DNA of 27,521 nt from Trichoplax adhaerens (GCF_000150275.1 NW_002060992.1:11655-39175), one strand, 5' to 3'; counted from the first letter of the stretch, positions 137 to 13,092 are shown. Program-made: numbers and translations. The notes: generated from the sequence alone by a model not told the origin.

Positions 137-2286
137 TACACGTCTTACGAATACACTTAGATCCGGGTTTTTGTGTGTTTAATATAGTCTTAGAATTCGC
201 AGTTTAATACAGTATGTGAAATTACTGAGTACCGATTAGACCGATCAGTCTCGATCTTAGAGTATTATTTAGAGCAAATAATACAGCGAGATAAGTCATT
301 TTATCATTAGCTACTGTCTACTAGCACTTTAGTGTAGTTGTGATAAAATCCAATCACGAAAATTCCAAAGTTGTAGAAAATTAGAACTTTATCAGATCTA
401 ATAGAAAGACTAGCTACACACAACTCTGCTCTAGCCGAATACAACTATTGAAGGACTTCTAGAAAGAACGAACTGAATAGTCTAAAGTTGCCAGCTTATA
501 TTCATTTCGTAGCAGTCACAGCCACAATCAGCGTAGCAATATTCTCCCTTAATTTACACATAGTCAAATTATTATTAGTGACAACATTTTACAGCGGACC
601 ATCATTAATCCGATATGGAAACAACTACAGTATTTCCGTACATATTATTCTTAGCAGTCAAAGCACGGTAAACTAAGCATACCCTAATATATGAATTACA
701 GTTCTATTTTAGCTCTAGCCTTAATAGATCTCAACACCTTACTATATATAGTCATCTGTACTGTAGCATAGAATCTACCATTGCAGTCTATAGTAGAGAG
801 CTACAAAATACGTCTTAAGATAAATATAGAAAGTTACGTTTCCGTATATCTTACTAACATAGCTAAAAATCTACAATCACAGTACTAAGTTTCGTTACAG
901 TAATATATTACTGTTTACTACGCTAATTGATAGACTAAGTTTCTTGCCAAAGCTAGATAGGCTAGAATACTATCAGATATTTAATATACGCACAAATCGC
1001 TCGTACGTTCTATTATACCGAGTTTATATTATATACTCTTCTATAATAACTATAGTGCAATTAATACAACGATATTTATAGATATTGATCTTTTCTATAA
1101 ACAAAGCGATTACCAGTTCTAGACAATTAGAATATAATATAGTTACTTATAGTTTTTACTATATATTATACGATCTATTCTTGCTTAGTTTCTCTTATAA
1201 AAAGCGATAGAGGTGCCTATTAATCTCTACTACTTTATATAAACGCTATTAGTGATATAATTCACAACTTACTACGCTTAGACGAATTATAATCACGCTC
1301 GGGTACTATTCATAATGGCCAACGTAGCTTAAACTTAATACATTATAACTTCAGATGTAAGTGGATATCAAGTAATATGCCCAATAAATTTTAGACATAA
1401 ATATTACTAGACCCAATTTGGATCCGTATTTTAAACGCTTAATATAAATTATATAATTAGAGCTTAAACGCGACCGTTCACACAATATAGTACACGGATT
1501 CCGCTAGTACTAAATACAGTTGACATCAAAATTTATCAGAATACTGAACCTAAAATAATTGGCCGTATAATGTACAAAAATCATTTAAAATCGTTGATCT
1601 TCTCTTTGTAAGTTAATATCGTAAGAGACGATTTGTAATACTTACTTTGTATTGCACGCATTTATGCTTCGTTGTATCTTTAATAATAGCCTGCTGCAAT
1701 GTTTATGATATGTAATTTTAGTTATAGTATAATATGTTACAGTAGATACTTTTACTCGTATTTTAAAATAGATTGCCCTGTTAGAATATTTTATAGCATT
1801 GTATAGATGATTTTGGATAGTTAAACGAAGGATACTTTAAATACTCCAACAGTAACTATTTGAGCTTATAATTGTAGAATTTTTGACAAGATTTGACAAT
1901 CTATCACACTTTTTCTAATTTCATGCACTTTAAAACAACTTGGCCAAATTCGTAGGAAAATTTGAATGTTCTAGAGAAGAAATTGGTTAGAAATTAGATT
2001 AGATAGATGTCATAAATAAAATATTGAGGAAACCTATTAATACTTAAGCAACAGTGCTTACTATTTTTTAATCTCTTTTGTTTAGTATTATAAGTAAGTC
2101 GTAGATCTTATATCTAGGTACACTGAAAGATAGCTAAGTATCTATCTGATAGATATATTGCAGATAGTACTCTACATATTATCGGTCACTAAAGTCACAT
2201 TATCCGTGTAGCATCGTATTTCTTTTATTCAGTTATGCTCTGCCTTGGGCTATATTCAATCATATGTAATATTTGAATGCAAAAGA
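137..2286 (+). repeat. Segmental direct duplication, copy A (partner 5722-7325)
   Basis: Co-linear with 5722-7325 from 'acttagatccggg' (155 vs 5740) to 'tttgaatgcaaaaga' (2286 vs 7325). Near-identical from 900 onward, more mismatched in the first ~200 bp. Differs by a 561-bp insertion (339-899), a 30-bp indel and a 10-bp tandem duplication near 1885. Confidence 0.95.
339..899. mobile_element. Putative solo LTR (561 bp, TGTGAT...GTTACA) with near-perfect 5-bp target-site duplication
   Basis: Absent from duplicate B, whose empty site reads tttagt-ataat-atattac (~5913-5930). Termini are TG...CA, flanked by GTAGT (334-338) and GTAAT (900-904). No coding capacity. Confidence 0.7.
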
Positions 2287-3059
2287 TAGTTTCTATTACC
2301 ATTTTATGTAGTCAGATAATTCCTGTGTGATACATTATTAAATACATTGACTTCATATTATTCGATGATAATTACATATTAACTTCATGAGATATTGTGC
2401 CACATTAAAGATATTCGAGAAAGAGTCATATTCTGAGTAAATTTACGCTACAGTTATATTATAACTTTGAAAATTTAGACACAATAGCATTCAAACTTCT
2501 TCGTAATAATTTCTAATACAAGGATATAGAACGATATAGCATTTTTTTATAGATGAAACTTTAGTAATTCGATTTAATTTACTATGAAGTATAAGTTTAC
2601 TTTTAATTATTTATCGGTAGAAAATGAGTGAATTAATCCACAGTATTAATCCGGATTACTATAAAAAACATTTAGTACAAAATGCGTTAGTATCCAGCAT
2701 CGTTGATGCGAATATTATCGGAGTTAAAGTATTATACGCTAGTTCAATGTATGGTATATAAATCTTATCATGCTATCTATAATCGCTGTTATACATAAAC
2801 CATTGATCTTAGTGTTACGAAACTTCTATATTTAGATAATGCCATAGCTAGATGGGGAATTTTTCTTTACTTAGTACTATTCTGGTACCTTGCTGTAATA
2901 AGTTAAACAGTTGCAGACTGAAAACAGATAGTTCTTACTATTACTCGAAGAATCAAGTTTATTTGATGGACTGAACTTTGCAAGAAATACTAATTCTTGC
3001 TTAATATTTTGAGATATTTGTTATGATATGTTAACTAACAATAAGCTTTACTAATATGA

Positions 3060-5230
3060 GTAATTTGCTCTTTTATTTACATTTTGTGATGCGAACATCG
3101 TGGTTTAAAACGAAACTTGCGTTTCAGGTGGTAAGTCTCAAACATGCGTATGTGACTTTACTTTCATGATAATTTATTAGTTAAATTTATTTATCTTATC
3201 TCGATATCTCGGATATTATGAAATATCAAATACTATAATATCGTAATGAGCATGACAAATCGACTTTGCTATAAGATGACTTTTAAATGCAGAATTAAGA
3301 ACTAACTTAATGATACATTTTCTATCACTTAAATTGTAAAATGTCAATATTATGGCTCTGATAATTAGGCCAACTTCAGTGGGCGAGTCTCTAGTAATCA
3401 TATATGATTTTGTTTTCTTAATAATTTGAAAGTTAAATTTTATATATTATCTCATTATCTCAGATATTACAAGCTATCGAATACCATATATCGTGTTATG
3501 TGTGATAAATCAAATTTGCGATAAGATAACCTTTAAATACAGAACTAAGAACTGATTTTATTATGTATTTTCCATTTTGTGCACTGTGTAATCTTAACGT
3601 TACTACTCTAACGATTACACTGATTTCAGCTGATAAGTCTCGAACAATCATATACTCGTATATTTTATTTTCATGATATATTAATAGTTTGAATTTCGTA
3701 TTATCTGTGTGCTTCGCATATCATGAACTGTCAAATACTATAATATCGTAATGTGTATGATGTGTTAAACTTTACGATAAGATAACTTTTATATATAGAA
3801 CTAAGAACTGATTGAATTTTACATTTTCTATTATTTACGCTGTATGATGCTGACACTGTGATTGCGACGATTACTTCTATTACAGCGCGTAAGTTTCAAA
3901 CAGTTTTATAAGAATATGCGATTTGTTTTCTTGATATTTGCAAAGTTAAAATTTTTACTTTATTGCGATATCTTGAATATTATAAACTATTTAACGCTAT
4001 AATATCGTAACGTACATGATGTATTAAACTTTACAATAAGATAACGTCTATATACAAGCTAAGAACTGATTGAATTTACATTTTCTATTATTTACACTGT
4101 ATGATGCTGACGCTATGGCTGCAACGATTACTTCTATTACAGCGCGTAAGTTTCAAACAGTTTTATAAGAATATGCGATTTGTTTTCTTGATATTTGCAA
4201 AGTTAAATTTTTTATTTTATTGTAATGTCTTGAATATCGAATACTATAATATTACAGTATACATGATGTATTAAACTTCGATAAGATAACTTTTAAATAC
4301 AGAACTAAAAACTGATTGAATTTTACATTTTCTATTATTTACACTGTATGATGTTGACACTATGGCTGCGACGATTACTTCTATTACAGCGCGTAAGTTT
4401 CAAACAGTTTTATAAGAATATGTGATTTTTTCATGGTATCTTAATAGTTAATTTTTTGATGTTAGATTGCTGTAACGATTACTTCGAGTTCAGTACGAAG
4501 TCTCAGATAATATATAATCAAATATGATTTTGTTCTTAGGATAGATTTAAAGTTAAATTTGTTTAAAACATCTTGATATCCTGAATACTATGATTATAAT
4601 ATCGTAATGCGTGTAATATATGAACTTTAAAATAAGATAACTTTCAGATACAGAGCTAAGAACTGATTCGATTATATATTTTCGATCAGTTACTATGTAC
4701 GGTGTCAACACAATGGCTGTAACAATTACTTCGATTTTAGAGTGTAAATCTCAAAAAGTCACTTATGATTTTGTTTTATAAAGGTTTAATAGTTTAATAT
4801 GATTACATGATCTCAGTATCTCGGATATTATGTACCTAGTGAGCACCATAATATCGTAATATGTCTCACAAATCAACTTTGCCATAGGGTAACATTAATT
4901 ACAGAATTTAATAATCGATTTAATATTACATTTTCTATCATTTGCACTGTATGGTATCAACATCATGGCTCTAACGATATACACCAATTTCAGTTCGTAA
5001 GTCTAAGACAATCACATACTATTTTATTTCTCTAATAGTTTTATGGATAAATTTTTTTATATTAGCGATTATTAAATACAGAATTTGCACATTGATATAA
5101 TATACATTTATATCATTTAAACTGCCTGATATCAACATTATGGGTCTAGTGAGTTACTCCAATTTCAGTCCATAAGTCTAAGATAATCACATGCAAGTTT
5201 ACATCTAATATTTTTATAGCGAATTTCTTC
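3060..5230 (+). repeat. Tandem array 1 of ~250-bp unit (about 10 units, two shortened); each unit has YAG-NNN-GTAAGT-like motif
   Basis: Anchor motif recurs at 3125, 3377, 3627, 3883, 4140, 4387, 4491, 4738, 4991 and 5166. 'ataagataactttt...acagaactaagaactgattgaattttacattttcta' also recurs. Central units are near-identical; edge units are diverged. Confidence 0.93.
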
Positions 5231-5721
5231 TATATCAGCAATTATTAAAGACTCAAATGATAGACTTTACTAAAAAATAGCTTAACGACAAGATATTGTA
5301 ACATGTGAATTTATTTATCGACTTCATTATGCAGCATGCGTAAAACACATAGTTACCTACGATAACTGTAAGTGGCAGTATCAATATTCTTAGCTCGTAT
5401 CAAAAAGTGAGCTTTATGCTTTAGTGATTATTTATTAATTTAGATATGAAGTAATAAAGTTCTTGCAGAGATAGTGCAGACGAAATGTGTAATATATTAT
5501 ATATTTTATAGTGTACCTTACATAAATTATAGTATAATTTTTTGTGCATCGATATACCCTTATACATTTTGATAAATACAGTACTCTTAGTTTTTTCTAA
5601 AAAGTTAATTGTATAAATTTTTTTCCATTTTTAAAATACTATCGTGACCTATTTTATGGATAACTAGGCGAAGTCCTTGGATAGTTCGGTAAGAGATAAA
5701 TCTGAATTATACATAAAATAT

Positions 5722-7325
5722 TACACGTAGTACAAGTAAACTTAGATCCGGGTATTTGTGTGATTAATGTAGTCTTAGAATTCGCAGTTTAATACTGTAT
5801 GTGAAATTACTAAGTGCCGATTAGGGCTGTCAGTCTCGATCTTAGAGTATTATTTAGAACAAATAATACAGTGAGATAAGTCATTTTATCATTAGCTACT
5901 ATCTACTAGCGCTTTAGTATAATATATTACAGTAAACTACGCTAATTGATAGACTAAGCTTCTTGCCAAAGCTAGAGAGGCTAGAATACTATCAGATATT
6001 TAATATACGCACAAATCGCTCGTACATTCTATTATACCGAGTTTATATTATATACTCTTCTATAAGATAGAGAAGGTCTTCTCTATCTTCTATAATAACT
6101 ATAGTGCAATTAATGCAACGATATTTATAGATATTGATCTTTTCTATAAACAAAGCGATTACCAGTTCTAGACAATTAGAATATAATATAGTTACTTATA
6201 GTTTTTACTATATATTATACGATCTATTCTTGCTTAGTTTCTCTTATAAAAAGCGATAGAGGTGCCTATTAATCTCTACTACTTTATATAAACGCTATCA
6301 GTGATATAATTCACAACTTACTACGCTTAGACGAATTATAATCACGCTCGGGTACTATTCATAATGGCCAACGTAGCTTAAACTTAATACATTATAACTT
6401 CAGATGTAAGTGGATATCAAGTAATATGCCCAATAAATTTTAGACATAAATATTACTAGACCCAATTTGGATCCGTATTTTAAACGCTTAATATAAATTA
6501 TATAATTAGAGCTTAAACGCGACCATTCACACAATATAGTACACGGATTCCGCTAGTCCTAAATACAGTTGACATCAAAATTTATCAGAATACTGAACCT
6601 AAAATAATTGGCCGTATAATATACAAAAATCATTTAAAATCGTTGATCTTCTCTTTGTAAGCTAATATCGTAAGAGACGATTTGTAATACTTACTTTGTA
6701 TTGCACGCATTTATGCTTCGTTATATCTTTAACAATAGCCTGCTGCAATGTTTATGATATGTAATTTTAGTTATAGTATAATATGTTACAGTAGATACTT
6801 TTACTCGTATTTTAAAATAGATTGCCCTGTTAGAATATTTTATAGCATTGTATAGATGATTTTGGATAGTTAAACGAAGGATACTTTAAATACTCCAACA
6901 GTAACTATTTGAGCTTATAATTATAGAATTTTTGACAATCTATCACACTTTTTCTAATTTCATGCACTTTAAAACAACTTGGCCAAATTCGTAGGAAAAT
7001 TTGAATGTTCTAGAGAAGAAATTGGTTAGAAATTAGATTAGATAGATGTTATAAATAAAATATTGAGGAAACCTATTAATACTTAAGCAACAGTGCTTAC
7101 TATTTTTTAATCTCTTTTGTTTAGTATTATAAGTAAGTCGTAGATCTTATATCTAGGTACACTGAAAGATAGCTAAGTATCTATCTGATAGATATATTGC
7201 AGATAGTACTCTACATATTATCGGTCACTAAAGTCACATTATCCGTGTAGCATCGTATTTCTTTTATTCAGTTATGCTCTGCCTTGGGCTATATTCAATC
7301 ATATGTAATATTTGAATGCAAAAGA
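5722..7325 (+). repeat. Segmental direct duplication, copy B (partner 137-2286)
   Basis: See copy A. Lacks the 339-899 insertion, carries an extra 30-bp hairpin at 6064-6095 and runs directly into tandem array 2 at 'aagaatatgcg'. Confidence 0.95.
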
Positions 7326-8537
7326 ATATGCGATTTGTTTTCTTGATATTTACAAAATTAAATAATTTTTTACTTTATTACGATATCTTGAATGCTATAA
7401 ACTATTTAACACTATAATATCGTAACGTGTATAATGTATTTAGCTTTACGATAAGATAACTTTTATATACAAAGCAAAAAACTGATTGAATTTTACATTT
7501 TCTATTATTTACATTGTATGATGCTAACACTGTGACTGCGACGATAACTTCTATTACAGCGCGTAAGTTTCAAACAGTTTTATAAGAATATGCGACTTGT
7601 TTTCTTGATATTTGCAAAACTAAATAATTTTTTACTTTATTGCAATATCTTGAATACTATAATATCGTAACGTTTATGATGCATTCAATTTACTATAAGA
7701 TAAATTTTAGATACAGAACTAAGAACTGATTGAATTTTACATTTTCTATCATTTACGCTTTATGAAACTAACACTGTGACTGTGACGATAACTTCTATTA
7801 CAGCGCGTAAGTTTCAAACAGTTTTATAAGAATATGCGATTTGTTTTCTTGATATTTGCAAAGTTAAATTTTTTACTTTATTGCGATATCTTGAATATTA
7901 TAAACTATTTAACACTATAATATCGTAACGTGTATAATGTATTAAACTTTACAATAAGATAACGTCTATATACAAGCTAAGAACTGATTGAATTTTACAT
8001 TTTATATTATTTACACTGTATGATGCTAACACTGTGACTGCGACGAAAACTTCTATTACAGCGCGTAAGTTTCAAACAGTTTTATAAGAATATGCGATTT
8101 GTTTTCTTGATATTTGCAAAATTGAATAATTTTTTACTTTATTGCGATATCTTGAATATTGTGACTATCAAATACTATAATATTACAGTATGCCTGATGT
8201 ATTAAACTTTACGATAAGATAACTTTTATATACAGAACTAAGAACTGATTGAATTTTACATTTTATATTATTTACACTGTATGATGCTGACACTATGGCT
8301 ACAACGATTACTTCCATTACAGCGCGTAAGTTTCAAACAGTTTTATAAGAATATGCGATTTGTTTTCTTGATATTTGCAAAGTTAAATTTTATACTTTAT
8401 TGTGATATCTTGAATATTATGACTATCGAATACTGTAATATTACAGTATGCCTGATGTATTAAACTTTACGATAAGATAACTTATATATACAGAACTAAA
8501 AACTGATTGAATTTTACATATTCTATCATTCACACTG
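7321..8537 (+). repeat. Tandem array 2 of the same ~250-bp unit (~4.7 highly similar units)
   Basis: 'cagcgcgtaagtttcaaacagttttataagaatatgcg' at 7557, 7801, 8059 and 8320 (periods 244, 258, 261). Confidence 0.95.
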
Positions 8538-8548
8538 AGGGTGAATCA

Positions 8549-8648
8549 TTAAGTATAGATTACACAAATAAGGAGTTAAGCTACGGTCTAGTAGAAATTT
8601 ACTTTTACTAAGAATAGGCTATACCGTATTTAGAAGTAAAGACTACAA
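8549..8648 (+). repeat. Dispersed repeat fragment (second copy 16208-16307)
   Basis: 'gagtta.gctac..tctagt.gaaatt.acttttactaa.aatag.ctataccgtatttagaagtaaa.actacaa' is shared with 16232-16307. Confidence 0.8.
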
Positions 8649-11600
8649 GCGGCATTAGCTTACTTAGTTCACATCAAAAAAAGTGAATTTTATACTTAAT
8701 TACTTCTTAGACCTAAATCGACAAACTCAAAGAGTGTTTGTCTTACAGATATAAAGCGTCTTAACTTTGCTCTATTGCAAGATAAAACATAGTTAAAGTC
8801 TATAAGTCTAGCCTTTTAAACTTATATCAAGAGAAGTTATCTAACAAGAAATTTTAGAAAAATCTTCCTAGCTACAAAAATTGCAAAATAACTTAGATTA
8901 ATTAAGCTCCGCATTGAGTTCCCTTTATCTAAATCATTTAAGTCCAACGTAATAATGTACAATATTGTTTTCACGATTTTTATAATGATGTTCTTATTAT
9001 TTGTAAATTGTTTAGATATAAGCAGCAATCTATTAGCTTTCAGTTGGATAACACAATTTTGGTAGCTGCTAGTGGACTAAATTGGAAATGCAATTAGCGT
9101 TTAGGCTTCCAGAGTAGTTGAGAAGATTTGATACTTGTAGTCAGTGATAACAGAATAATCTAATTACAAACTAAGCTGAAATTAAAACTGAAAGCAAATT
9201 TGCTGTATTATGTCCCCATCAACTATGTCAATCAGCTTAAGTAGCTATAAGAATATATTTGCAGGATTTACATCAGTGATGGTGTTAAAAATTTGCAATA
9301 TCATTTCAAGTATAAGAAGTATCATACTAGTTTATTTTTTATCCATGAAAGCCTACGCATTTTTAATAAAATATAATTTTGCAAAAGTACTTATAACTGT
9401 GTTACTTATTTGGTATATGATTCATGCTCATAGAATATGTTGTATTTTATACAATAGTTTCTCTTACGAAATTGATCTAATCATTTATAACAAGTGATAA
9501 CTGAGTGTTATAACTGATGCATGCAGCATTTATTGCTAATATCACTTCGTACAGTACATAGTTTCCTGTTTTAAATTGAACATCAAAGGTTTACTGAAAA
9601 GTTTAATAGAGGTAACTGCTCATAATATTTCATACTTCATTAGTCAATGGCAAGCTGTTTCCTTTGATTTAGCCTGGGTAGAAAATTCAAGATCTACTCC
9701 TTTTCTCAATTATATTACTGCAGCTTAAACAAAAGAATATTTGAATTAAAAAGTAAAAATGATAGAGGTATTTGAGTAAACATTTCTTGTAATTAGATTT
9801 CTGTTATCTTCCCTAGTCTCCCTTACGCTAAACCCCAGTTTAGATGTAGGAGTAACAGAAATTTTTTAAGTTACTAAGGGAGCAATCGATGACTGCTCTA
9901 GTTACAAGTGGCATGGTTGGTTAAATACCCCGTAGCACCAAGCAACTTTCTCGCTTACTATTCATTTAAACTAACAAAATAATGTAACGATTTTGATATT
10001 AGTTACTATACGTCCATTGGAAGCCATTTGTGATATTCGATCATGTTTATAATAAATACTATAAAATGTACAATCTTCTATGCGAGCATCTACTTGATTT
10101 GGGGTTAAAGTTCCGGGTAGTCTTCCATATTTGATGCAAATTTATGAAAATTGATAAGTTGCAATAATTGAACTGGCTACAGTAACCTATTACGCTAAAT
10201 TATCAATATTGTATTATTAACAAGTACAAGAGGCCCTACACTTACTGTATTAATTCCTGCAACTAAAGTAAGAGATTATAGCGTAAAAGGATAGTCATCC
10301 AGTGACTATTACTAATGAATGCTTATCTTATTCTCTAATAAGTAATACGTATACTTAGGTATATTTTGAGAATACCGAGATCCATAATGTTTTACATTTT
10401 TATGAATAAGTGCACAGTTTTACAATACTATTAAGGTATTAATATTTATAATTAATGGTTGTATGAATAGTTACTTTAAATTGACTGATACTTTAATAAA
10501 ACTTAGGTTTAGTTTTGTCTAAGAAACTAGTGATAGTTACTGATTCTCCTGATAATGGCAAACTTTTAGTATTTACAGCAAGGACCTAATATATCAAGTT
10601 TAATAGCTATAATGATATAAAATAGACAAGTTGTGAAATCTACAGCATAACTGTAGAGGCTTCGATTAATTACTGCTGACATTATGGAATTTGAAAGTAT
10701 GATAATACTCGTATTAAACGGTGAAAACTAGATAGACTAAAGTAGTTACCTGCAGTTACACCAGAATCTGCATAATGCAGTTCTTTACTATTTTCTACCG
10801 TAATATAAGAAGTCCGAAAGCTATGGGAGAGTACAAAATTCTACAATGTAACTTTAATTGTAAAAACTTTAGTTGATTACACTAGCTACGAGATTTGAAA
10901 GTGTGATGGAGGGTTCGAAGAGTCAGATAATGTGGTTTTAGTTGCCATACAGAGAATTACACAAGGAGCTTAAGAAAAGAAGATACTTTATTGTAGATTG
11001 TAGTTAGGTACAGTGTGATAATTACGGTAGGTCAGCGTGGTAGCTGCCGTGAGTAAAGTGTGAATACTAACTGTGACTAATAATGCAACTTAAGAAATCT
11101 AAGGTAGAAAACGGCAGTATTTATAGCTATGGCATTAGAACACATGCAGAGAACATGATTGTAGGATTAGATACAACATATACCATAACAGGTTATAGAA
11201 TAGCAGATGATTGTAGAAAATAGCGAGGACTGTAATAACTAAATGTAGTAAGCCATATTTGAATGTAGAGCGAACAGACTGTATATATGTCTAAATATAA
11301 GATCAATACAATGTGTCTATATTTAAGAGTAGAATATAGTTCCAGTATATTCTAAATACACTACAGAAAGCATGGTATTACTTGTATAGTATAGTAATAA
11401 TTTCAAACACGCGATTAATATAATTAGTTAAAACACTCCATAAATTGCAAATAACTCTAGATTGTAGCTGCTCAACTTGATATCGATGGATTACTAAGCT
11501 AGCAGAGCTTGAGATACAACGACTGTGGTGGAGCTCACAAGTGCACAACACAACTCATTTTTATGCTAGACTATAACATTGATAGCGAACGCCGTATATA

Positions 11601-13092
11601 TCAAATGATAATATCCGAGATAAACAGACAATTGTACCTGAGAAATTGATAAGTATTCTAAGAATTGAAACGATTATAAATGTATACGTATATATGGCTA
11701 TTAAATTAGATTATTCTTGATTTGTACATAGTACTGGTCATGATATTTGCAGATGATAGGGTTCTGGCTTGAGTACCAATGAAGCTATTGTCCGCCATCA
11801 TGTTACCTATTGTAATCAATTTAGAACATCAACAATGCTGACCAATAAGATCGCAAAGAAATGATGTCATAGCCAACTATTTTATGGATCTGCCCGCGTC
11901 ATCAATTATTTTTCCAGCTATAATCTCGCGTTCTATTTCATTTCCCTGCTCATAATTATCGACTTAGTTTTATCGTATTCCATTGAATTAACTTCAATCC
12001 AGCTATGCGTTCAGGAAAGATTTATAGTTATCTTCTGATTGCATTTGCTTTTATCTAGTTTAGCTAGTGGTATTATTATTTTTGCTGGAAATACTTTAAA
12101 GTTAGACCGTATAAACTTGAGTGCCGCTCTGATTGATCCATCGCTTATGGGATTTTTCGTAAGTATTGCTATTTCAAATATTATGGATTAAAACAGTACA
12201 GTCGTTCGTTAACGGTTTACCTTTTCACACCTATAAGCTACTAAAGTTGGGTGGAAGCAGTTTTAAGATAAGATAAATTTAGCTTAAATACAATTACTAT
12301 TCAGATAGAATTCGATCAAATTAAGAAATTGTGATATTGATTAACTGATGAAGAATAATATAATTTACAGTTAAAGACGAAACGCTTCACTTAGGCTTAC
12401 AATGAAAATCTAGGCAAAAATTATTGAAATCTGTTTCTATTAGCTCCTTCCTAACTTTGAGTAATTTTTGTAGTGCATTAAAATATTCGCTATTTATGAC
12501 CGAGTTAATTGGAGAAAGAAAGATTTTGTAAAGTTACTTTTATCGAATTTGTCCCTTCTAAGATACTTAATTGATAAAAGATATTCTCAGCTGCAATTAA
12601 AGATCTCACGATCAACTTTGGTTGTGGTAATAAATTTAGATGATCTGATCAATTTTACTTTGATAAGCTCATTCAATTAGTGATTATATTATAGTGTTTG
12701 ATAATAGAAATGGGCTTAGGTTAAACAGATTTAAGCGAGAAGAGTTTATGCATTAAAATCAGTAATATCAGATCTATCAAGGTGATTTGCAGGGTGAAAA
12801 TATTTTCGGTTTATAATTCATAACAATGTGATTTATAGGATATGAGTCATAGATGAACGTTTTATTTTAGGCTCTAGCGAATTCCCTCTTTGTCGTAAAA
12901 TTAAGCCAGTTTTCAAGTACGTCACCATCCCAGGTAAGCTTGAGCTCCTTTTATGCCTTAATAATGATAAGTAAATGACATACTTAGGATTGAACATTTT
13001 ATTCGCTCACTTCTTTTTATACGCAAATTAAATTATAGGCATCTGGCATAGTAACCTTTGGAGTAATATGTATTGTGTCATGTCCTACTTAC

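What the first reader, a model, noticed from the sequence alone, without database searches (positions are those of the whole stretch)
3060..8537. ~250-bp tandem repeat whose every unit looks like an intron plus a variable 3-nt microexon (YAG-NNN-GTAAGT)
Seen: all 14 units keep a T-rich tract ending in YAG, then exactly 3 nt, then a donor-like motif. The triplets are GTG|gtaagt (3128-30), TGG|gcgagt (3380-82), CTG|ataagt (3630-32), CGC|gtaagt (3886-88, 4143-45, 4390-92), TAC|gaagt (4494-96), AGT|gtaaat (4741-43), TTC|gtaagt (4994-96), TCC|ataagt (5169-71) and CGC|gtaagt (7560-62, 7804-06, 8062-64, 8323-25). The flanks are conserved while the triplet varies at all three positions. Branch-like CTGAC/CTAAC lies ~20-35 nt upstream in many units. 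Established: frame-preserving microexons and Schistosoma micro-exon genes diversify proteins by exon skipping. Inference: this may be an amplified cassette array of single-codon exons, allowing one-residue-at-a-time variation by splicing, or recursive-splice-like sites. Ten units have a GT donor, one has GC and three look dead. The flanking large exons of a host gene were not identified.
Basis: partly seen in the sequence, partly recalled or inferred. Interest (0 to 1): 0.85.

Follow-up and report, generated by a model that had tools for sequence, protein, structure and literature searches.

The report
Peptide gene with one-codon exons
In the placozoan Trichoplax, this ~250-base repeat is a working part of a small secreted-protein gene: nine of its units each contribute a three-base exon, mostly one arginine codon, that RNA data show spliced together in genomic order, an extreme gene design that every public gene model misses.

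Summary
Fourteen ~250-bp units in two blocks (3060-5200, 7320-8537) carry YAG-NNN-donor. Nine have a perfect YAG-NNN-GTAAGT, against 0.59 expected by chance.

RNA contigs from three studies show that exactly these nine are used. A 30-nt exon (Q) is joined to CGC x4 and then to a last exon at 9016 (ATA TAA), matching the four CGC units at 7560-8325. Q is also joined to GTG, CGC x5, TTC and then to a 21-nt exon (P, 5668-5688).

All exons are phase 0 and all introns GT-AG. The text reads ...ENLNVLEKKL-V-RRRRR-F-AKSLDSS-ENLNVLEKKL-RRRR-I-stop.

The five units with GC, ATAAGT, GAAGT or GTAAAT donors appear in no spliced contig. No exon skipping or mix-and-match was seen.

The window starts after an assembly gap. 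Exon 1 (signal peptide plus acidic propiece) is visible only in the ~92% identical copy on C1400 and in Trichoplax sp. H2. There the first array spells Arg with CGT, CGC, AGA and CGA.

RNA has five CGC where the window has three, so the assembled array is probably short or polymorphic.

This scan had already reported one-codon-exon arrays on other DNA of this genome. This is a further gene. I found no paper describing it.

The parts
1956..1985 (+). Exon Q1 (30 nt, ENLNVLEKKL), acceptor tag|, donor |gttaga. It opens module 1.
   Evidence: Identical to Q2. Q is joined to GTG-CGCx5-TTC-P in contigs of X4, X5 and X7 (tables 5 and 5c). By genomic order the Q before GTG must be this copy.
3128..3130 (+). 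Micro-exon GTG (Val), used.
   Evidence: GT..AG joint leaving 3130 in X4, X5 and X7. Perfect CAG-GTG-GTAAGT.
3380..3382 (+). Unit TGG|gcgagt (GC donor), not seen in RNA. It lies inside intron 3131-3885.
   Evidence: The joint 3130->3886 skips it.
3630..3632 (+). Decayed unit CTG|ataagt, no GT donor.
   Evidence: Sequence; skipped by the joint 3130->3886.
3886..3888 (+). Micro-exon CGC (Arg), module 1.
   Evidence: Joint 3130->3886; perfect motif.
4143..4145 (+). Micro-exon CGC (Arg), module 1.
   Evidence: Perfect motif. A CGC run lies between GTG and TTC in the contigs (table 5c). Individual CGC units cannot be told apart in RNA.
4390..4392 (+). Micro-exon CGC (Arg), the last intact CGC of module 1 in this assembly.
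   Evidence: As above. A contig covers 4393-4996 as retained intron plus TTC (records 12 and 19).
4494..4496 (+). Truncated, decayed unit TAC|gaagt.
   Evidence: Sequence and alignment. It lies in intron 4393-4993.
4741..4743 (+). Unit AGT|gtaaat, not seen in spliced RNA.
   Evidence: It lies in the retained-intron contig 4393-4996 and is absent from the Q-GTG-CGCx5-TTC-P contigs.
4994..4996 (+). Micro-exon TTC (Phe), used.
   Evidence: GT..AG joint 4996->5668 in X4 and X5. TTC precedes P in X4, X5 and X7.
5169..5171 (+). Decayed unit TCC|ataagt.
   Evidence: Sequence. The same dead unit precedes exon P in both Trichoplax sp. H2 loci.
5668..5688 (+). Exon P2 (21 nt, AKSLDSS), acceptor tag|, donor |gtaaga.
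   Evidence: Joints TTC->5668 and P->Q from the loose ends at 5689 and 6994 in X4, X5 and X7.
5722..7325 (+). Second copy (96%) of window 137-336 plus 901-2286. This is the P-Q intron, exon Q and the start of the next intron, so the whole module was duplicated.
6995..7024 (+). Exon Q2 (30 nt, ENLNVLEKKL).
   Evidence: The depth peak is here, 736-1660 against about 10-20 in the introns, in X4, X5 and X7. The loose end behind 7024 reads CGCx4 and then the last exon.
7560..7562 (+). Micro-exon CGC (Arg), module 2, first of four.
   Evidence: Exactly four CGC lie between Q and the last exon in the contigs (table 7), and exactly four intact units lie in this interval.
7804..7806 (+). Micro-exon CGC (Arg), module 2, second of four.
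   Evidence: As for 7560.
8062..8064 (+). Micro-exon CGC (Arg), module 2, third of four.
   Evidence: As for 7560.
8323..8325 (+). Micro-exon CGC (Arg), module 2, fourth of four.
   Evidence: As for 7560. The X7 joint lands at 8323.
8326..8537 (+). Partial last unit with no acceptor or triplet; part of the last intron, 8326-9015.
9016..9125 (+). Last exon: ATA TAA (Ile, stop), then 3' UTR. A candidate AATAAA lies further on at 9365-9370 (sequence only).
   Evidence: The first 18 letters are identical to the contig loose end in X4 and X5; the C1400 copy differs at 2 of 18. The 122-letter loose end reaches about 9125.

Best explanation
The repeat is the body of an expressed gene for a small secreted protein of Trichoplax. 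Each intact unit is a complete short intron (GTAAGT donor, CTNTAAC-like branch site, pyrimidine-rich tract, YAG) plus one codon.

In the window the transcript runs as follows:
- exon Q1
- GTG
- CGC run: three units in this assembly, five in RNA
- TTC
- exon P2
- exon Q2
- four CGC
- last exon, ATA TAA

Every exon is phase 0. The micro-exons spell V-R(n)-F and R4, that is the poly-arginine stretches between two copies of a 17-residue segment ((A/T)KSL(D/A)(S/N)S-ENLNVLEKKL).

The 5' end lies in the assembly gap just before the window. It comprises exon 1 (signal peptide plus a 40-residue propiece of charge -12), a first array of 4-6 Arg micro-exons, and the first P exon. It is seen in the collinear C1400 copy and in Trichoplax sp. 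H2.

Shown: the order and use of the exons, the reading frame, and the absence of a retrocopy.

Inferred:
(a) The ~250-nt units are recognised by intron definition, so exon length does not matter. Neighbouring introns must be removed one after another, because a U1 site and the upstream 3' splice site overlap on a 3-nt exon.
(b) The arrays grew by tandem duplication of intron plus codon, and whole modules by a ~5-kb duplication.
(c) The Arg runs act as polybasic convertase sites and/or as the cationic counterpart of the acidic propiece, as in the trichoplaxin-2 precursor design.
For: RNA evidence
- GT..AG joints 3130->3886 (X4, X5), 3130->8323 (X7) and 4996->5668 (X4, X5).
- the letters between the joint sides are CGC repeats.
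- the Q-GTG-CGCx5-TTC-P contigs have depth 500-1770 in X4, X5 and X7 (three studies; X7 is on record as RNA-Seq).
- the loose end behind 7024 reads CGCx4 + ATATAAGCAGCAATCTAT.
- the P->Q junction shows in the loose ends at 5689 and 6994.
- the flat-depth, DNA-like run X1 shows none of these joints.

Attribution to this copy
- the last exon lies at 9016 with 18/18 letters, against 16/18 in the C1400 copy.
- exon Q occurs three times in the genome, each time followed by GTTAGA intron, so there is no retrocopy.

Sequence support
- the nine perfect motifs are exactly the nine units used.
- all 12 introns are GT-AG.

The 5' end and constraint
- exon 1 in C1400 ends in phase 0.
- the H2 loci have exon 1 -> CGT CGC CGT CGC -> P -> Q and exon 1 -> (CGA) CGT AGA CGC CGT CGC -> P. 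These are four synonymous Arg codons, which is protein-level constraint.
- conservation dips at the triplet.
Against: - The RNA contigs have five CGC between GTG and TTC, but the window has three intact CGC units there. The C1400 copy has only CGC and CGT. So neither assembled copy reproduces module 1 exactly.
- The evidence is from assembled contigs, not raw reads. It gives no isoform frequencies or transcript ends and cannot exclude minor forms.
- Q1 and Q2 are identical, so a contig cannot say which Q it came from.
- Exon 1 is not in this contig (gap). Its link to the window's exons rests on collinearity with C1400 and H2, not on a single RNA molecule.
- The function of the protein is untested. 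The 17-residue segments are neutral and not amphipathic.
Confidence: 0.87

Rival explanations
1. It is a neutral low-copy tandem repeat (satellite) whose splice-like motifs are carried along by amplification, and the triplets vary through CpG decay.
For: Five of the 14 units are visibly decayed. The units are amplified as a block. CGC/CGT differences could be CpG transitions.
Against: Spliced contigs use the sites in three studies. The unit occurs at only three loci, all downstream of homologous signal-peptide exons. The Arg codons include AGA and CGA, not only CpG transitions. No stop codon was seen among the intact triplets listed.
Confidence: 0.03
2. It is a diversity generator: the symmetric one-codon exons are skipped in different combinations, giving peptides or Arg runs of variable length and composition.
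For: All exons are phase 0, so any skipping keeps the frame. TGG (GC donor) and AGT (GTAAAT) are potentially weak, regulated exons. The run length in RNA (5) differs from the assembly (3).
Against: Each module appears in one form only, in X4, X5 and X7 (tables 5c and 7). No contig includes TGG or AGT. The 4-CGC module matches the genome exactly.
Confidence: 0.1
3. It is an artefact: the spliced-looking contigs come from de Bruijn graph chimeras among repeats, or from another locus or a retrocopy hidden in an assembly gap.
For: The CGC count disagrees with the assembly. X1 shows odd non-GT-AG joints between units. Both assembled copies have gaps.
Against: The joints fall exactly on GT..AG at the predicted 3-nt exons. 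The joined stretches (12-19 nt) are shorter than the 31-letter words that the tool descriptions give for Logan's index, so if the contigs were assembled with words of that length, single words span them. The same forms recur in three studies and under two organism labels. Their depth is 25-100 times that of the intron contigs. They carry window-specific letters. No genomic Q is followed by CGC or GTG.
Confidence: 0.04
4. They are recursive splice sites that only help to remove a long intron stepwise, or a tandem small-RNA (spliced-leader-type) gene array whose GTAAGT is the leader's donor.
For: YAG followed closely by GTAAGT resembles recursive sites. Tandem ~250-bp units each with a strong donor resemble SL RNA gene arrays. 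This was my own first guess.
Against: The three bases remain in the RNA and read in frame. There is no Rfam match at E<=1. The exons are joined in cis, in genomic order, to ordinary exons P, Q and the last exon.
Confidence: 0.02

Closest known systems
One-codon-exon peptide genes reported earlier by this scan on other DNA of the same genome (s1-749457, s1-733970, s1-749468, s1-749462)
   Same: Consecutive 3-nt exons are spliced in order. They spell the basic (Arg-rich) part of a small secreted protein and are missed by gene models. No skipping was seen.
   Different: This is a different gene and contig. Here the micro-exon runs are short (4-7) and alternate with ordinary 21- and 30-nt exons in a repeated module. 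They spell mainly poly-Arg linkers rather than one long tail. I could not compare sequences with those loci because their coordinates are not given.
Schistosoma micro-exon genes (MEGs)
   Same: Secreted proteins with a signal-peptide exon at the 5' end. Most of the coding length lies in tandem, symmetric, very short exons that arose by duplication.
   Different: From my own knowledge, MEG exons are 6-36 nt and are skipped to make variants. Here the exons are 3 nt, the whole intron plus exon unit is a recognisable tandem repeat, no skipping was seen, and no sequence relative was found outside Trichoplax.
Single conserved 3-nt micro-exons of animals (cytohesin-1, homothorax, MAP4K5; PMC6314551, PMC7392893, PMC8632122)
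   Same: A 3-nt exon flanked by full splice sites adds one residue in frame.
   Different: Those are isolated, usually alternative exons. Here up to seven follow one another and look constitutive.
Trichoplaxin-2 precursor (EST GR418172; PMC7436000)
   Same: Same organism and same protein plan: an MN.K.IL... signal peptide, an acidic propiece, then an arginine run (13 Arg).
   Different: Its 13 Arg and the mature peptide lie in one ordinary exon at C1378:35695-35754(-). Exon-1 similarity to this gene is limited to the signal peptide (BLASTP E=0.37). This gene has no cationic amphipathic end.
Recursive splice sites / ratchet points (Drosophila Ubx, long vertebrate introns)
   Same: A 3' splice site is followed almost at once by a strong 5' splice site, and the two cannot be occupied at the same time.
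   Different: At recursive sites nothing stays in the mRNA. Here three bases stay and are translated in frame, and the introns are short (241-1306 nt), not very long.

Membership tests
Micro-exon (cassette exon of 30 nt or less, here 3 nt) | Flanked by a 3' splice site (YAG) and a 5' splice site (GT/GC) | tested here: met
   Nine perfect YAG-NNN-GTAAGT against 0.59 expected; all introns GT-AG.
Micro-exon (cassette exon of 30 nt or less, here 3 nt) | Present in spliced RNA between neighbouring exons | tested here: met
   joints and between-letters in X4, X5 and X7, for 9 of the 14 units; the other 5 were not seen.
Micro-exon (cassette exon of 30 nt or less, here 3 nt) | Keeps the reading frame | tested here: met
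   Exon 1 ends in phase 0. P is 21 nt, Q 30 nt and the micro-exons 3 nt. The frame ends at ATA TAA.
Schistosome-type micro-exon gene (MEG) | Signal-peptide exon, then a run of short symmetric exons making up most of the coding sequence | tested here: met
   Exon 1 is in the C1400 copy and in H2; in the window itself it lies in the gap. By the model, 15-17 of about 21-23 exons are 3 nt.
Schistosome-type micro-exon gene (MEG) | Protein variants made by skipping micro-exons | tested here: inconclusive
   The contigs show one form per module, and contigs drop rare variants.
Schistosome-type micro-exon gene (MEG) | Sequence homology to schistosome MEG proteins | tested here: not met
   phmmer of exon 1 against 1.84 billion representatives found only Trichoplax proteins.
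Trichoplaxin-2-type antimicrobial precursor | Signal peptide, acidic propiece, arginine run | tested here: met
   Exon 1 has an MNTKIILIATLF... signal peptide and a propiece of charge -12; the Arg runs have 4-5 residues.
Trichoplaxin-2-type antimicrobial precursor | Significant sequence similarity of the precursor | tested here: inconclusive
   BLASTP E=0.37. In the five-sequence alignment M1 N2 K4 I6 L7 A9 L11 are invariant.
Trichoplaxin-2-type antimicrobial precursor | Cationic amphipathic C-terminal peptide | tested here: not met
   The P+Q 17-mers have charge 0 to +1 and a hydrophobic moment no higher than shuffles. The C-terminus is RRRR-I.
Recursive splice site | Zero-length exon: nothing is retained in the mRNA | tested here: not met
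   The triplets are retained in the contigs.
Satellite DNA | High copy number, dispersed or long arrays, no role in mature RNA | tested here: not met
   About 50-60 units at three loci only; they are spliced.
Introner-like mobile introns | The same intron sequence inserted in many unrelated genes | tested here: not met
   A pattern search finds the unit only in the window, at C1400:782-797 kb and at C1400:17-30 kb.
Spliced-leader or other small-RNA gene array | Match to a known RNA family; the donor is used in trans | tested here: not met
   No Rfam hit at E<=1, no tRNA, and cis joints in genomic order.

The most novel reading that the evidence does not exclude
The intron-plus-codon cassette works as a length dial for polybasic linkers. 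Unequal crossing-over adds or removes one arginine at a time. On this reading the 3-versus-5 CGC difference between assembly and RNA, and the 4-versus-6 difference between the two H2 copies, are real copy-number variation. Weak units (TGG with a GC donor, AGT with GTAAAT) would be included only in some cells, so that one gene yields peptides or processing sites of graded charge. It would also mean that the placozoan spliceosome handles runs of 3-nt exons constitutively, with no room for a normal exon-junction complex at each junction.
Probability: 0.2. Interest if true: 0.9.

Novelty: new variant of a known kind. Interest (0 to 1): 0.8.

Why it matters
Three-base exons are known as rare, isolated, usually regulated events. 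Here four to seven of them follow one another and are joined faithfully, which pushes constitutive exon recognition to its lower limit. It gives a natural substrate for several questions:
- intron definition against exon definition;
- the order in which introns are removed when the splice-site footprints overlap;
- what happens to exon-junction complexes and nonsense-mediated decay when junctions are 3 nt apart.

It also shows a way in which a protein can grow one residue at a time, by tandem duplication of an intron together with one codon.

Practically, all three public models of this gene (TRIADDRAFT_60413, TrispH2_002920, TrispH2_011760) stop after exon 1 or run into intron. Secreted-peptide catalogues of placozoans, which are used to argue about the origin of neuropeptide signalling and innate defence, are therefore missing such genes.

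Tried and rejected
- Rfam at E<=1 and ARAGORN on the whole window found nothing. That ended my first idea of a spliced-leader or small-RNA gene array.
- My first pattern search had the spacing wrong by one base and found only noise. It was corrected.
It was shortened to the last 23 bases of exon Q plus flank.
- I looked for exon 1 inside the window, for example ORFs at 2852 and 3056. These are not needed: contigs show 2934-3127 as retained intron, and Q is the upstream exon.
- Exon 1 is absent from contig C1365. Positions 9540-11654 are N, and a protein search of the genome finds it once only, on C1400.
- Upstream and downstream flanks (2287-3127, 8520-10300) have no paralogous match at the C1400:17-30 kb locus.
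- Paper searches found nothing on this gene or architecture. I tried Trichoplax with microexon or micro-exon, 3-nt exon terms, peptide strings and gene identifiers.
- The search of earlier findings by relatives and by 'signal peptide acidic' gave nothing.
- Amphipathic-helix test of the 17-mers: negative.
- Only single exons by reference were used, plus the published 20-residue trichoplaxin-2 peptide as given in PMC7436000.


Full report
WHAT IS IN THE SEQUENCE

The window is G000:C1365:11655-39175 of a 105.6-Mb, ~29% G+C genome. Protein look-ups identify it as Trichoplax adhaerens. The gene model on the sister copy is TRIADDRAFT_60413, and the nearest relatives are from Trichoplax sp. H2.

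TRF and the repeat finder give a unit of 244-261 bp in two blocks, 3060-5200 and 7320-8537.

YAGNNNGTAAGT occurs nine times in the 27.5-kb window, all on the + strand and all inside the array. Shuffles give 0.59, with a largest value of 3.

The remaining five units have a GC donor (TGG|gcgagt, 3380), a weak donor (AGT|gtaaat, 4741) or no donor (CTG|ataagt 3630, TAC|gaagt 4494, TCC|ataagt 5169).

The ~2.1 kb between the two blocks is not an unrelated insert. Positions 5722-7325 are a 96% copy of 137-336 plus 901-2286, so a whole ~5-kb module was duplicated.

I collected 60 units from the three loci that hold this unit and stacked them on the triplet.
- Information content is 0.17, 0.66 and 0.61 bit at the three exon positions.
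- It is 1.5-1.8 bit at donor positions +2, +3, +4 and +6.
- It is 1.2-1.8 bit in the tract from -14 to -3.
- A CTNTAAC block sits at -24 to -18, the position expected for a branch site.

The AG was demanded by my detector, so its value is circular.

RNA EVIDENCE

One run search and one lay of contigs were allowed. I laid window:2800-8799 with four runs from four studies.

X1 has flat depth and none of the splice joints, so it behaves like DNA. X4, X5 and X7 (X7 is on record as RNA-Seq) have depth peaks of 736-1660 at 7000-7199 and 61-200 at 5600-5799, against about 10-20 in the repeat units.

Their contigs show four things.

(i) A loose end behind 7024 reads CGC CGC CGC CGC ATATAAGCAGCAATCTAT... 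(X4 and X5, 122 letters; X7 partial).
- 6995-7024 is a 30-nt exon (tag|GAAAAT...AAATTG|gttaga), which I call Q.
- The 18 letters after the CGC run are found at 9016 behind ttgtttag|. They match 18/18; the sister copy on C1400 matches only 16/18.
- Between Q2 and 9016 the window has exactly four intact CAG|CGC|GTAAGT units (7560, 7804, 8062, 8323) and no other.

(ii) A joint from Q has the letters GTG CGC CGC CGC CGC CGC TTC before position 5668. The aligner placed the GT of GTG on the donor GT, hence the table entries '7026' and 'G...'. Depth is 500, 1770 and 1233.

(iii) GT..AG joints run 3130->3886 (X4, X5) and 3130->8323 (X7), with CGC x4 between, and 4996->5668 (X4, X5).

(iv) Loose ends at 5689 and 6994 join a 21-nt exon, P (5668-5688, tag|GCGAAG...GTTCG|gtaaga), to Q.

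Because Q also occurs at 1956-1985 with identical sequence and flanks, the order on the genome is: Q1, GTG (3128), the CGC units (3886, 4143, 4390), TTC (4994), P2, Q2, CGC x4, last exon. All twelve introns are GT-AG, 241-1306 nt long.

The five imperfect units are in no spliced contig. TGG and CTG lie in the 755-nt intron after GTG. TAC and AGT lie in the 601-nt intron before TTC, which one contig (4393-4996 plus P) still retains.

Exon Q occurs three times in the whole assembly, each time followed by GTTAGA intron sequence. The joined form is therefore not an assembled retrocopy.

READING FRAME AND PRODUCT

P and Q translate as AKSLDSS and ENLNVLEKKL. With the micro-exons in phase 0 the text is ...ENLNVLEKKL | V RRRRR F | AKSLDSS ENLNVLEKKL | RRRR | I stop.

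The window begins directly after an assembly gap: C1365:9540-11654 is N. The 5' end is therefore missing here.

C1365 is collinear with C1400:~775-806 kb (- strand) at 90-96% identity. All 40 'other letters' listed in the laid contigs are the C1400 letters. Both copies are thus present in the sequenced animals, at about equal depth in the DNA-like run. They are haplotypes or a very recent duplication; I cannot tell which.

On C1400 the first exon is L012:7890-8069(-). It encodes 60 residues: a signal peptide (MNTKIILIATLFCAIVLANA), then a 40-residue propiece of net charge -12, ending in phase 0 at AAG|gtaagt. It is followed by decayed units, then CGT CGC CGT CGC, a dead TCC unit, and exon P.

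The two Trichoplax sp. H2 contigs show the same layout:
- exon 1, CGT CGC CGT CGC, P, Q;
- exon 1, (CGA) CGT AGA CGC CGT CGC, P.

Four different codons that all mean arginine, at homologous micro-exons, argue for selection on the protein.

The inferred protein is about 110 residues, encoded by some 21-23 exons, of which 15-17 are 3 nt. Searches were made exon by exon, by reference.

WHAT DOES NOT FIT

RNA has five CGC between GTG and TTC. The window has three intact units there, and the C1400 copy has only CGC and CGT.

A partly spliced contig with C1400-type intron letters also carries GTG plus five CGC. Neither assembled copy therefore reproduces module 1.

The likeliest reason is that the 2008 shotgun assembly is two units short or mis-joined in these repeats. 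Units of modules 1 and 2 are up to 94% alike, and X1 shows non-canonical unit-to-unit joints. A real copy-number difference cannot be excluded.

Module 2 matches exactly, four to four.

HOW IT PROBABLY WORKS (INFERENCE)

Each unit holds a full set of intron signals within ~250 nt, which fits recognition across the intron rather than across the exon. Exon length is then no obstacle.

U1 pairing (-3 to +6) covers the whole 3-nt exon and abuts the upstream AG. Neighbouring introns can therefore hardly be committed at the same moment and are probably removed one after another.

The partly spliced contigs give a hint on order.
- One molecule type has the five inner introns gone while both outer introns (1142 nt upstream, 601 nt downstream) are still present.
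- Another has the TTC-P intron gone while the intron before TTC is retained.

So there is no strict 5'-to-3' order, and most of the removed inner introns are the short ~250-nt units. This inference rests on contigs only.

At the protein level, the Arg runs are either polybasic convertase sites that release two 17-18-residue peptides, or the cationic partner of the acidic propiece. The charges nearly balance: about +13 against -12. The 17-mers themselves are neutral and not amphipathic. I therefore do not call them antimicrobial.

COMPARISON WITH WHAT IS KNOWN

Single 3-nt exons are documented (PMC6314551, PMC7392893, PMC8632122). Runs of them are not, in the library I could search. No paper mentions this gene or its peptides.

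Schistosome micro-exon genes are the nearest concept: a signal exon followed by tandem symmetric short exons. Their exons are longer and are skipped to make variants (from my own knowledge). No skipping is seen here, and there is no sequence relation.

The trichoplaxin-2 precursor (PMC7436000) has the same plan of signal peptide, acidic propiece and 13 arginines.
- I located its gene at C1378:35695-35754(-). Its 13 Arg and the mature peptide lie in one ordinary exon.
- Its first exon shares only the signal-peptide motif MN.K.IL.A..L with this gene.
- So the micro-exon design is not required for encoding an Arg run. It looks like the by-product of cassette duplication.

Further first exons of the same type lie at C1410:4.75 and 4.77 Mb. 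Another heads the C1400:15.7-30 kb locus, orthologous to TrispH2_008524. There the same unit spells T-Y-T-G-R-R-R, A-S-G-R, S-G-R-R-S and A-S-S-R5. That locus was not tested with RNA here.

This scan had already reported one-codon-exon arrays on other pieces of this genome. Those notes gave me the species and made me test the splicing reading first. The evidence above is from this window.

VERDICT

It is unsupported in its extension to combinatorial variation and recursive sites.

All public models miss the micro-exons. TRIADDRAFT_60413 is exon 1 plus a spurious intronic exon. TrispH2_002920 reads into the intron. TrispH2_011760 is partial.

Noticed in passing
G000:C1400:17200-29600 (+), loci L018, L013, L019; H2 orthologue L025: This paralogous gene uses the same intron-plus-codon unit. 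Its first exon is MNTKLILIAALFF... plus an acidic propiece (TrispH2_008524). Several micro-exon modules follow, spelling T-Y-T-G-R-R-R, A-S-G-R, S-G-R-R-S and A-S-S-R-R-R-R-R. These look like Gly (amidation) plus Arg processing sites written one codon per exon. Not tested with RNA here.
   Followed up: partly
G000:C1378:35695-35754 (-), locus L026: This is the gene of the published antimicrobial peptide trichoplaxin-2. WW, 13 Arg and the 20-residue peptide lie in one ordinary exon. The first exon (MNMKLILIAALLL..., acidic) lies ~280 nt upstream. The protein plan matches the window's gene, but there are no micro-exons.
   Followed up: partly
G000:C1410:4771704-4771868 (-) and 4754305-4754463 (-), loci L021, L022: Two more first exons of the same type: an MNTKLILVAT... 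signal peptide, then an acidic propiece with DEEDLKAL. The rest of these genes was not examined.
   Followed up: no
window 8604-8638: In all four runs the contigs break on both sides of a ~35-nt stretch, with different loose ends, and depth in the DNA-like run X1 rises to ~1900. It looks like a short dispersed repeat inside the last intron.
   Followed up: no
window 337-900: This ~560-nt stretch is present in module copy 1 but absent from copy 2 (5722-7325). It is 77% similar to C1365:7363-7921 (L014), so it is probably an inserted dispersed repeat in the P-Q intron.
   Followed up: no
C1365:9540-11654; C1400:786170-794444; ends of H2 contigs NOWV01000019.1 and NOWV01000421.1: Both T. adhaerens copies have assembly gaps inside this gene, and both Trichoplax sp. 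H2 contigs end inside it, at the micro-exon arrays or just after them. The repeats break the assemblies, so unit counts from them are unreliable.
   Followed up: partly
L012:~7280-7420 (-), protein P0004: The second exon of the JGI model TRIADDRAFT_60413 (NFARKFLSIGYTY...) is intronic sequence upstream of the first micro-exon array. The model is wrong after residue 70.
   Followed up: yes
table 5c, run X7: In X7 (organism label B) exon P after TTC begins with A instead of G (ACG, Thr, instead of GCG, Ala). This is an allelic or strain difference in the 17-residue segment. The five-CGC run is the same as in the organism A runs.
   Followed up: no
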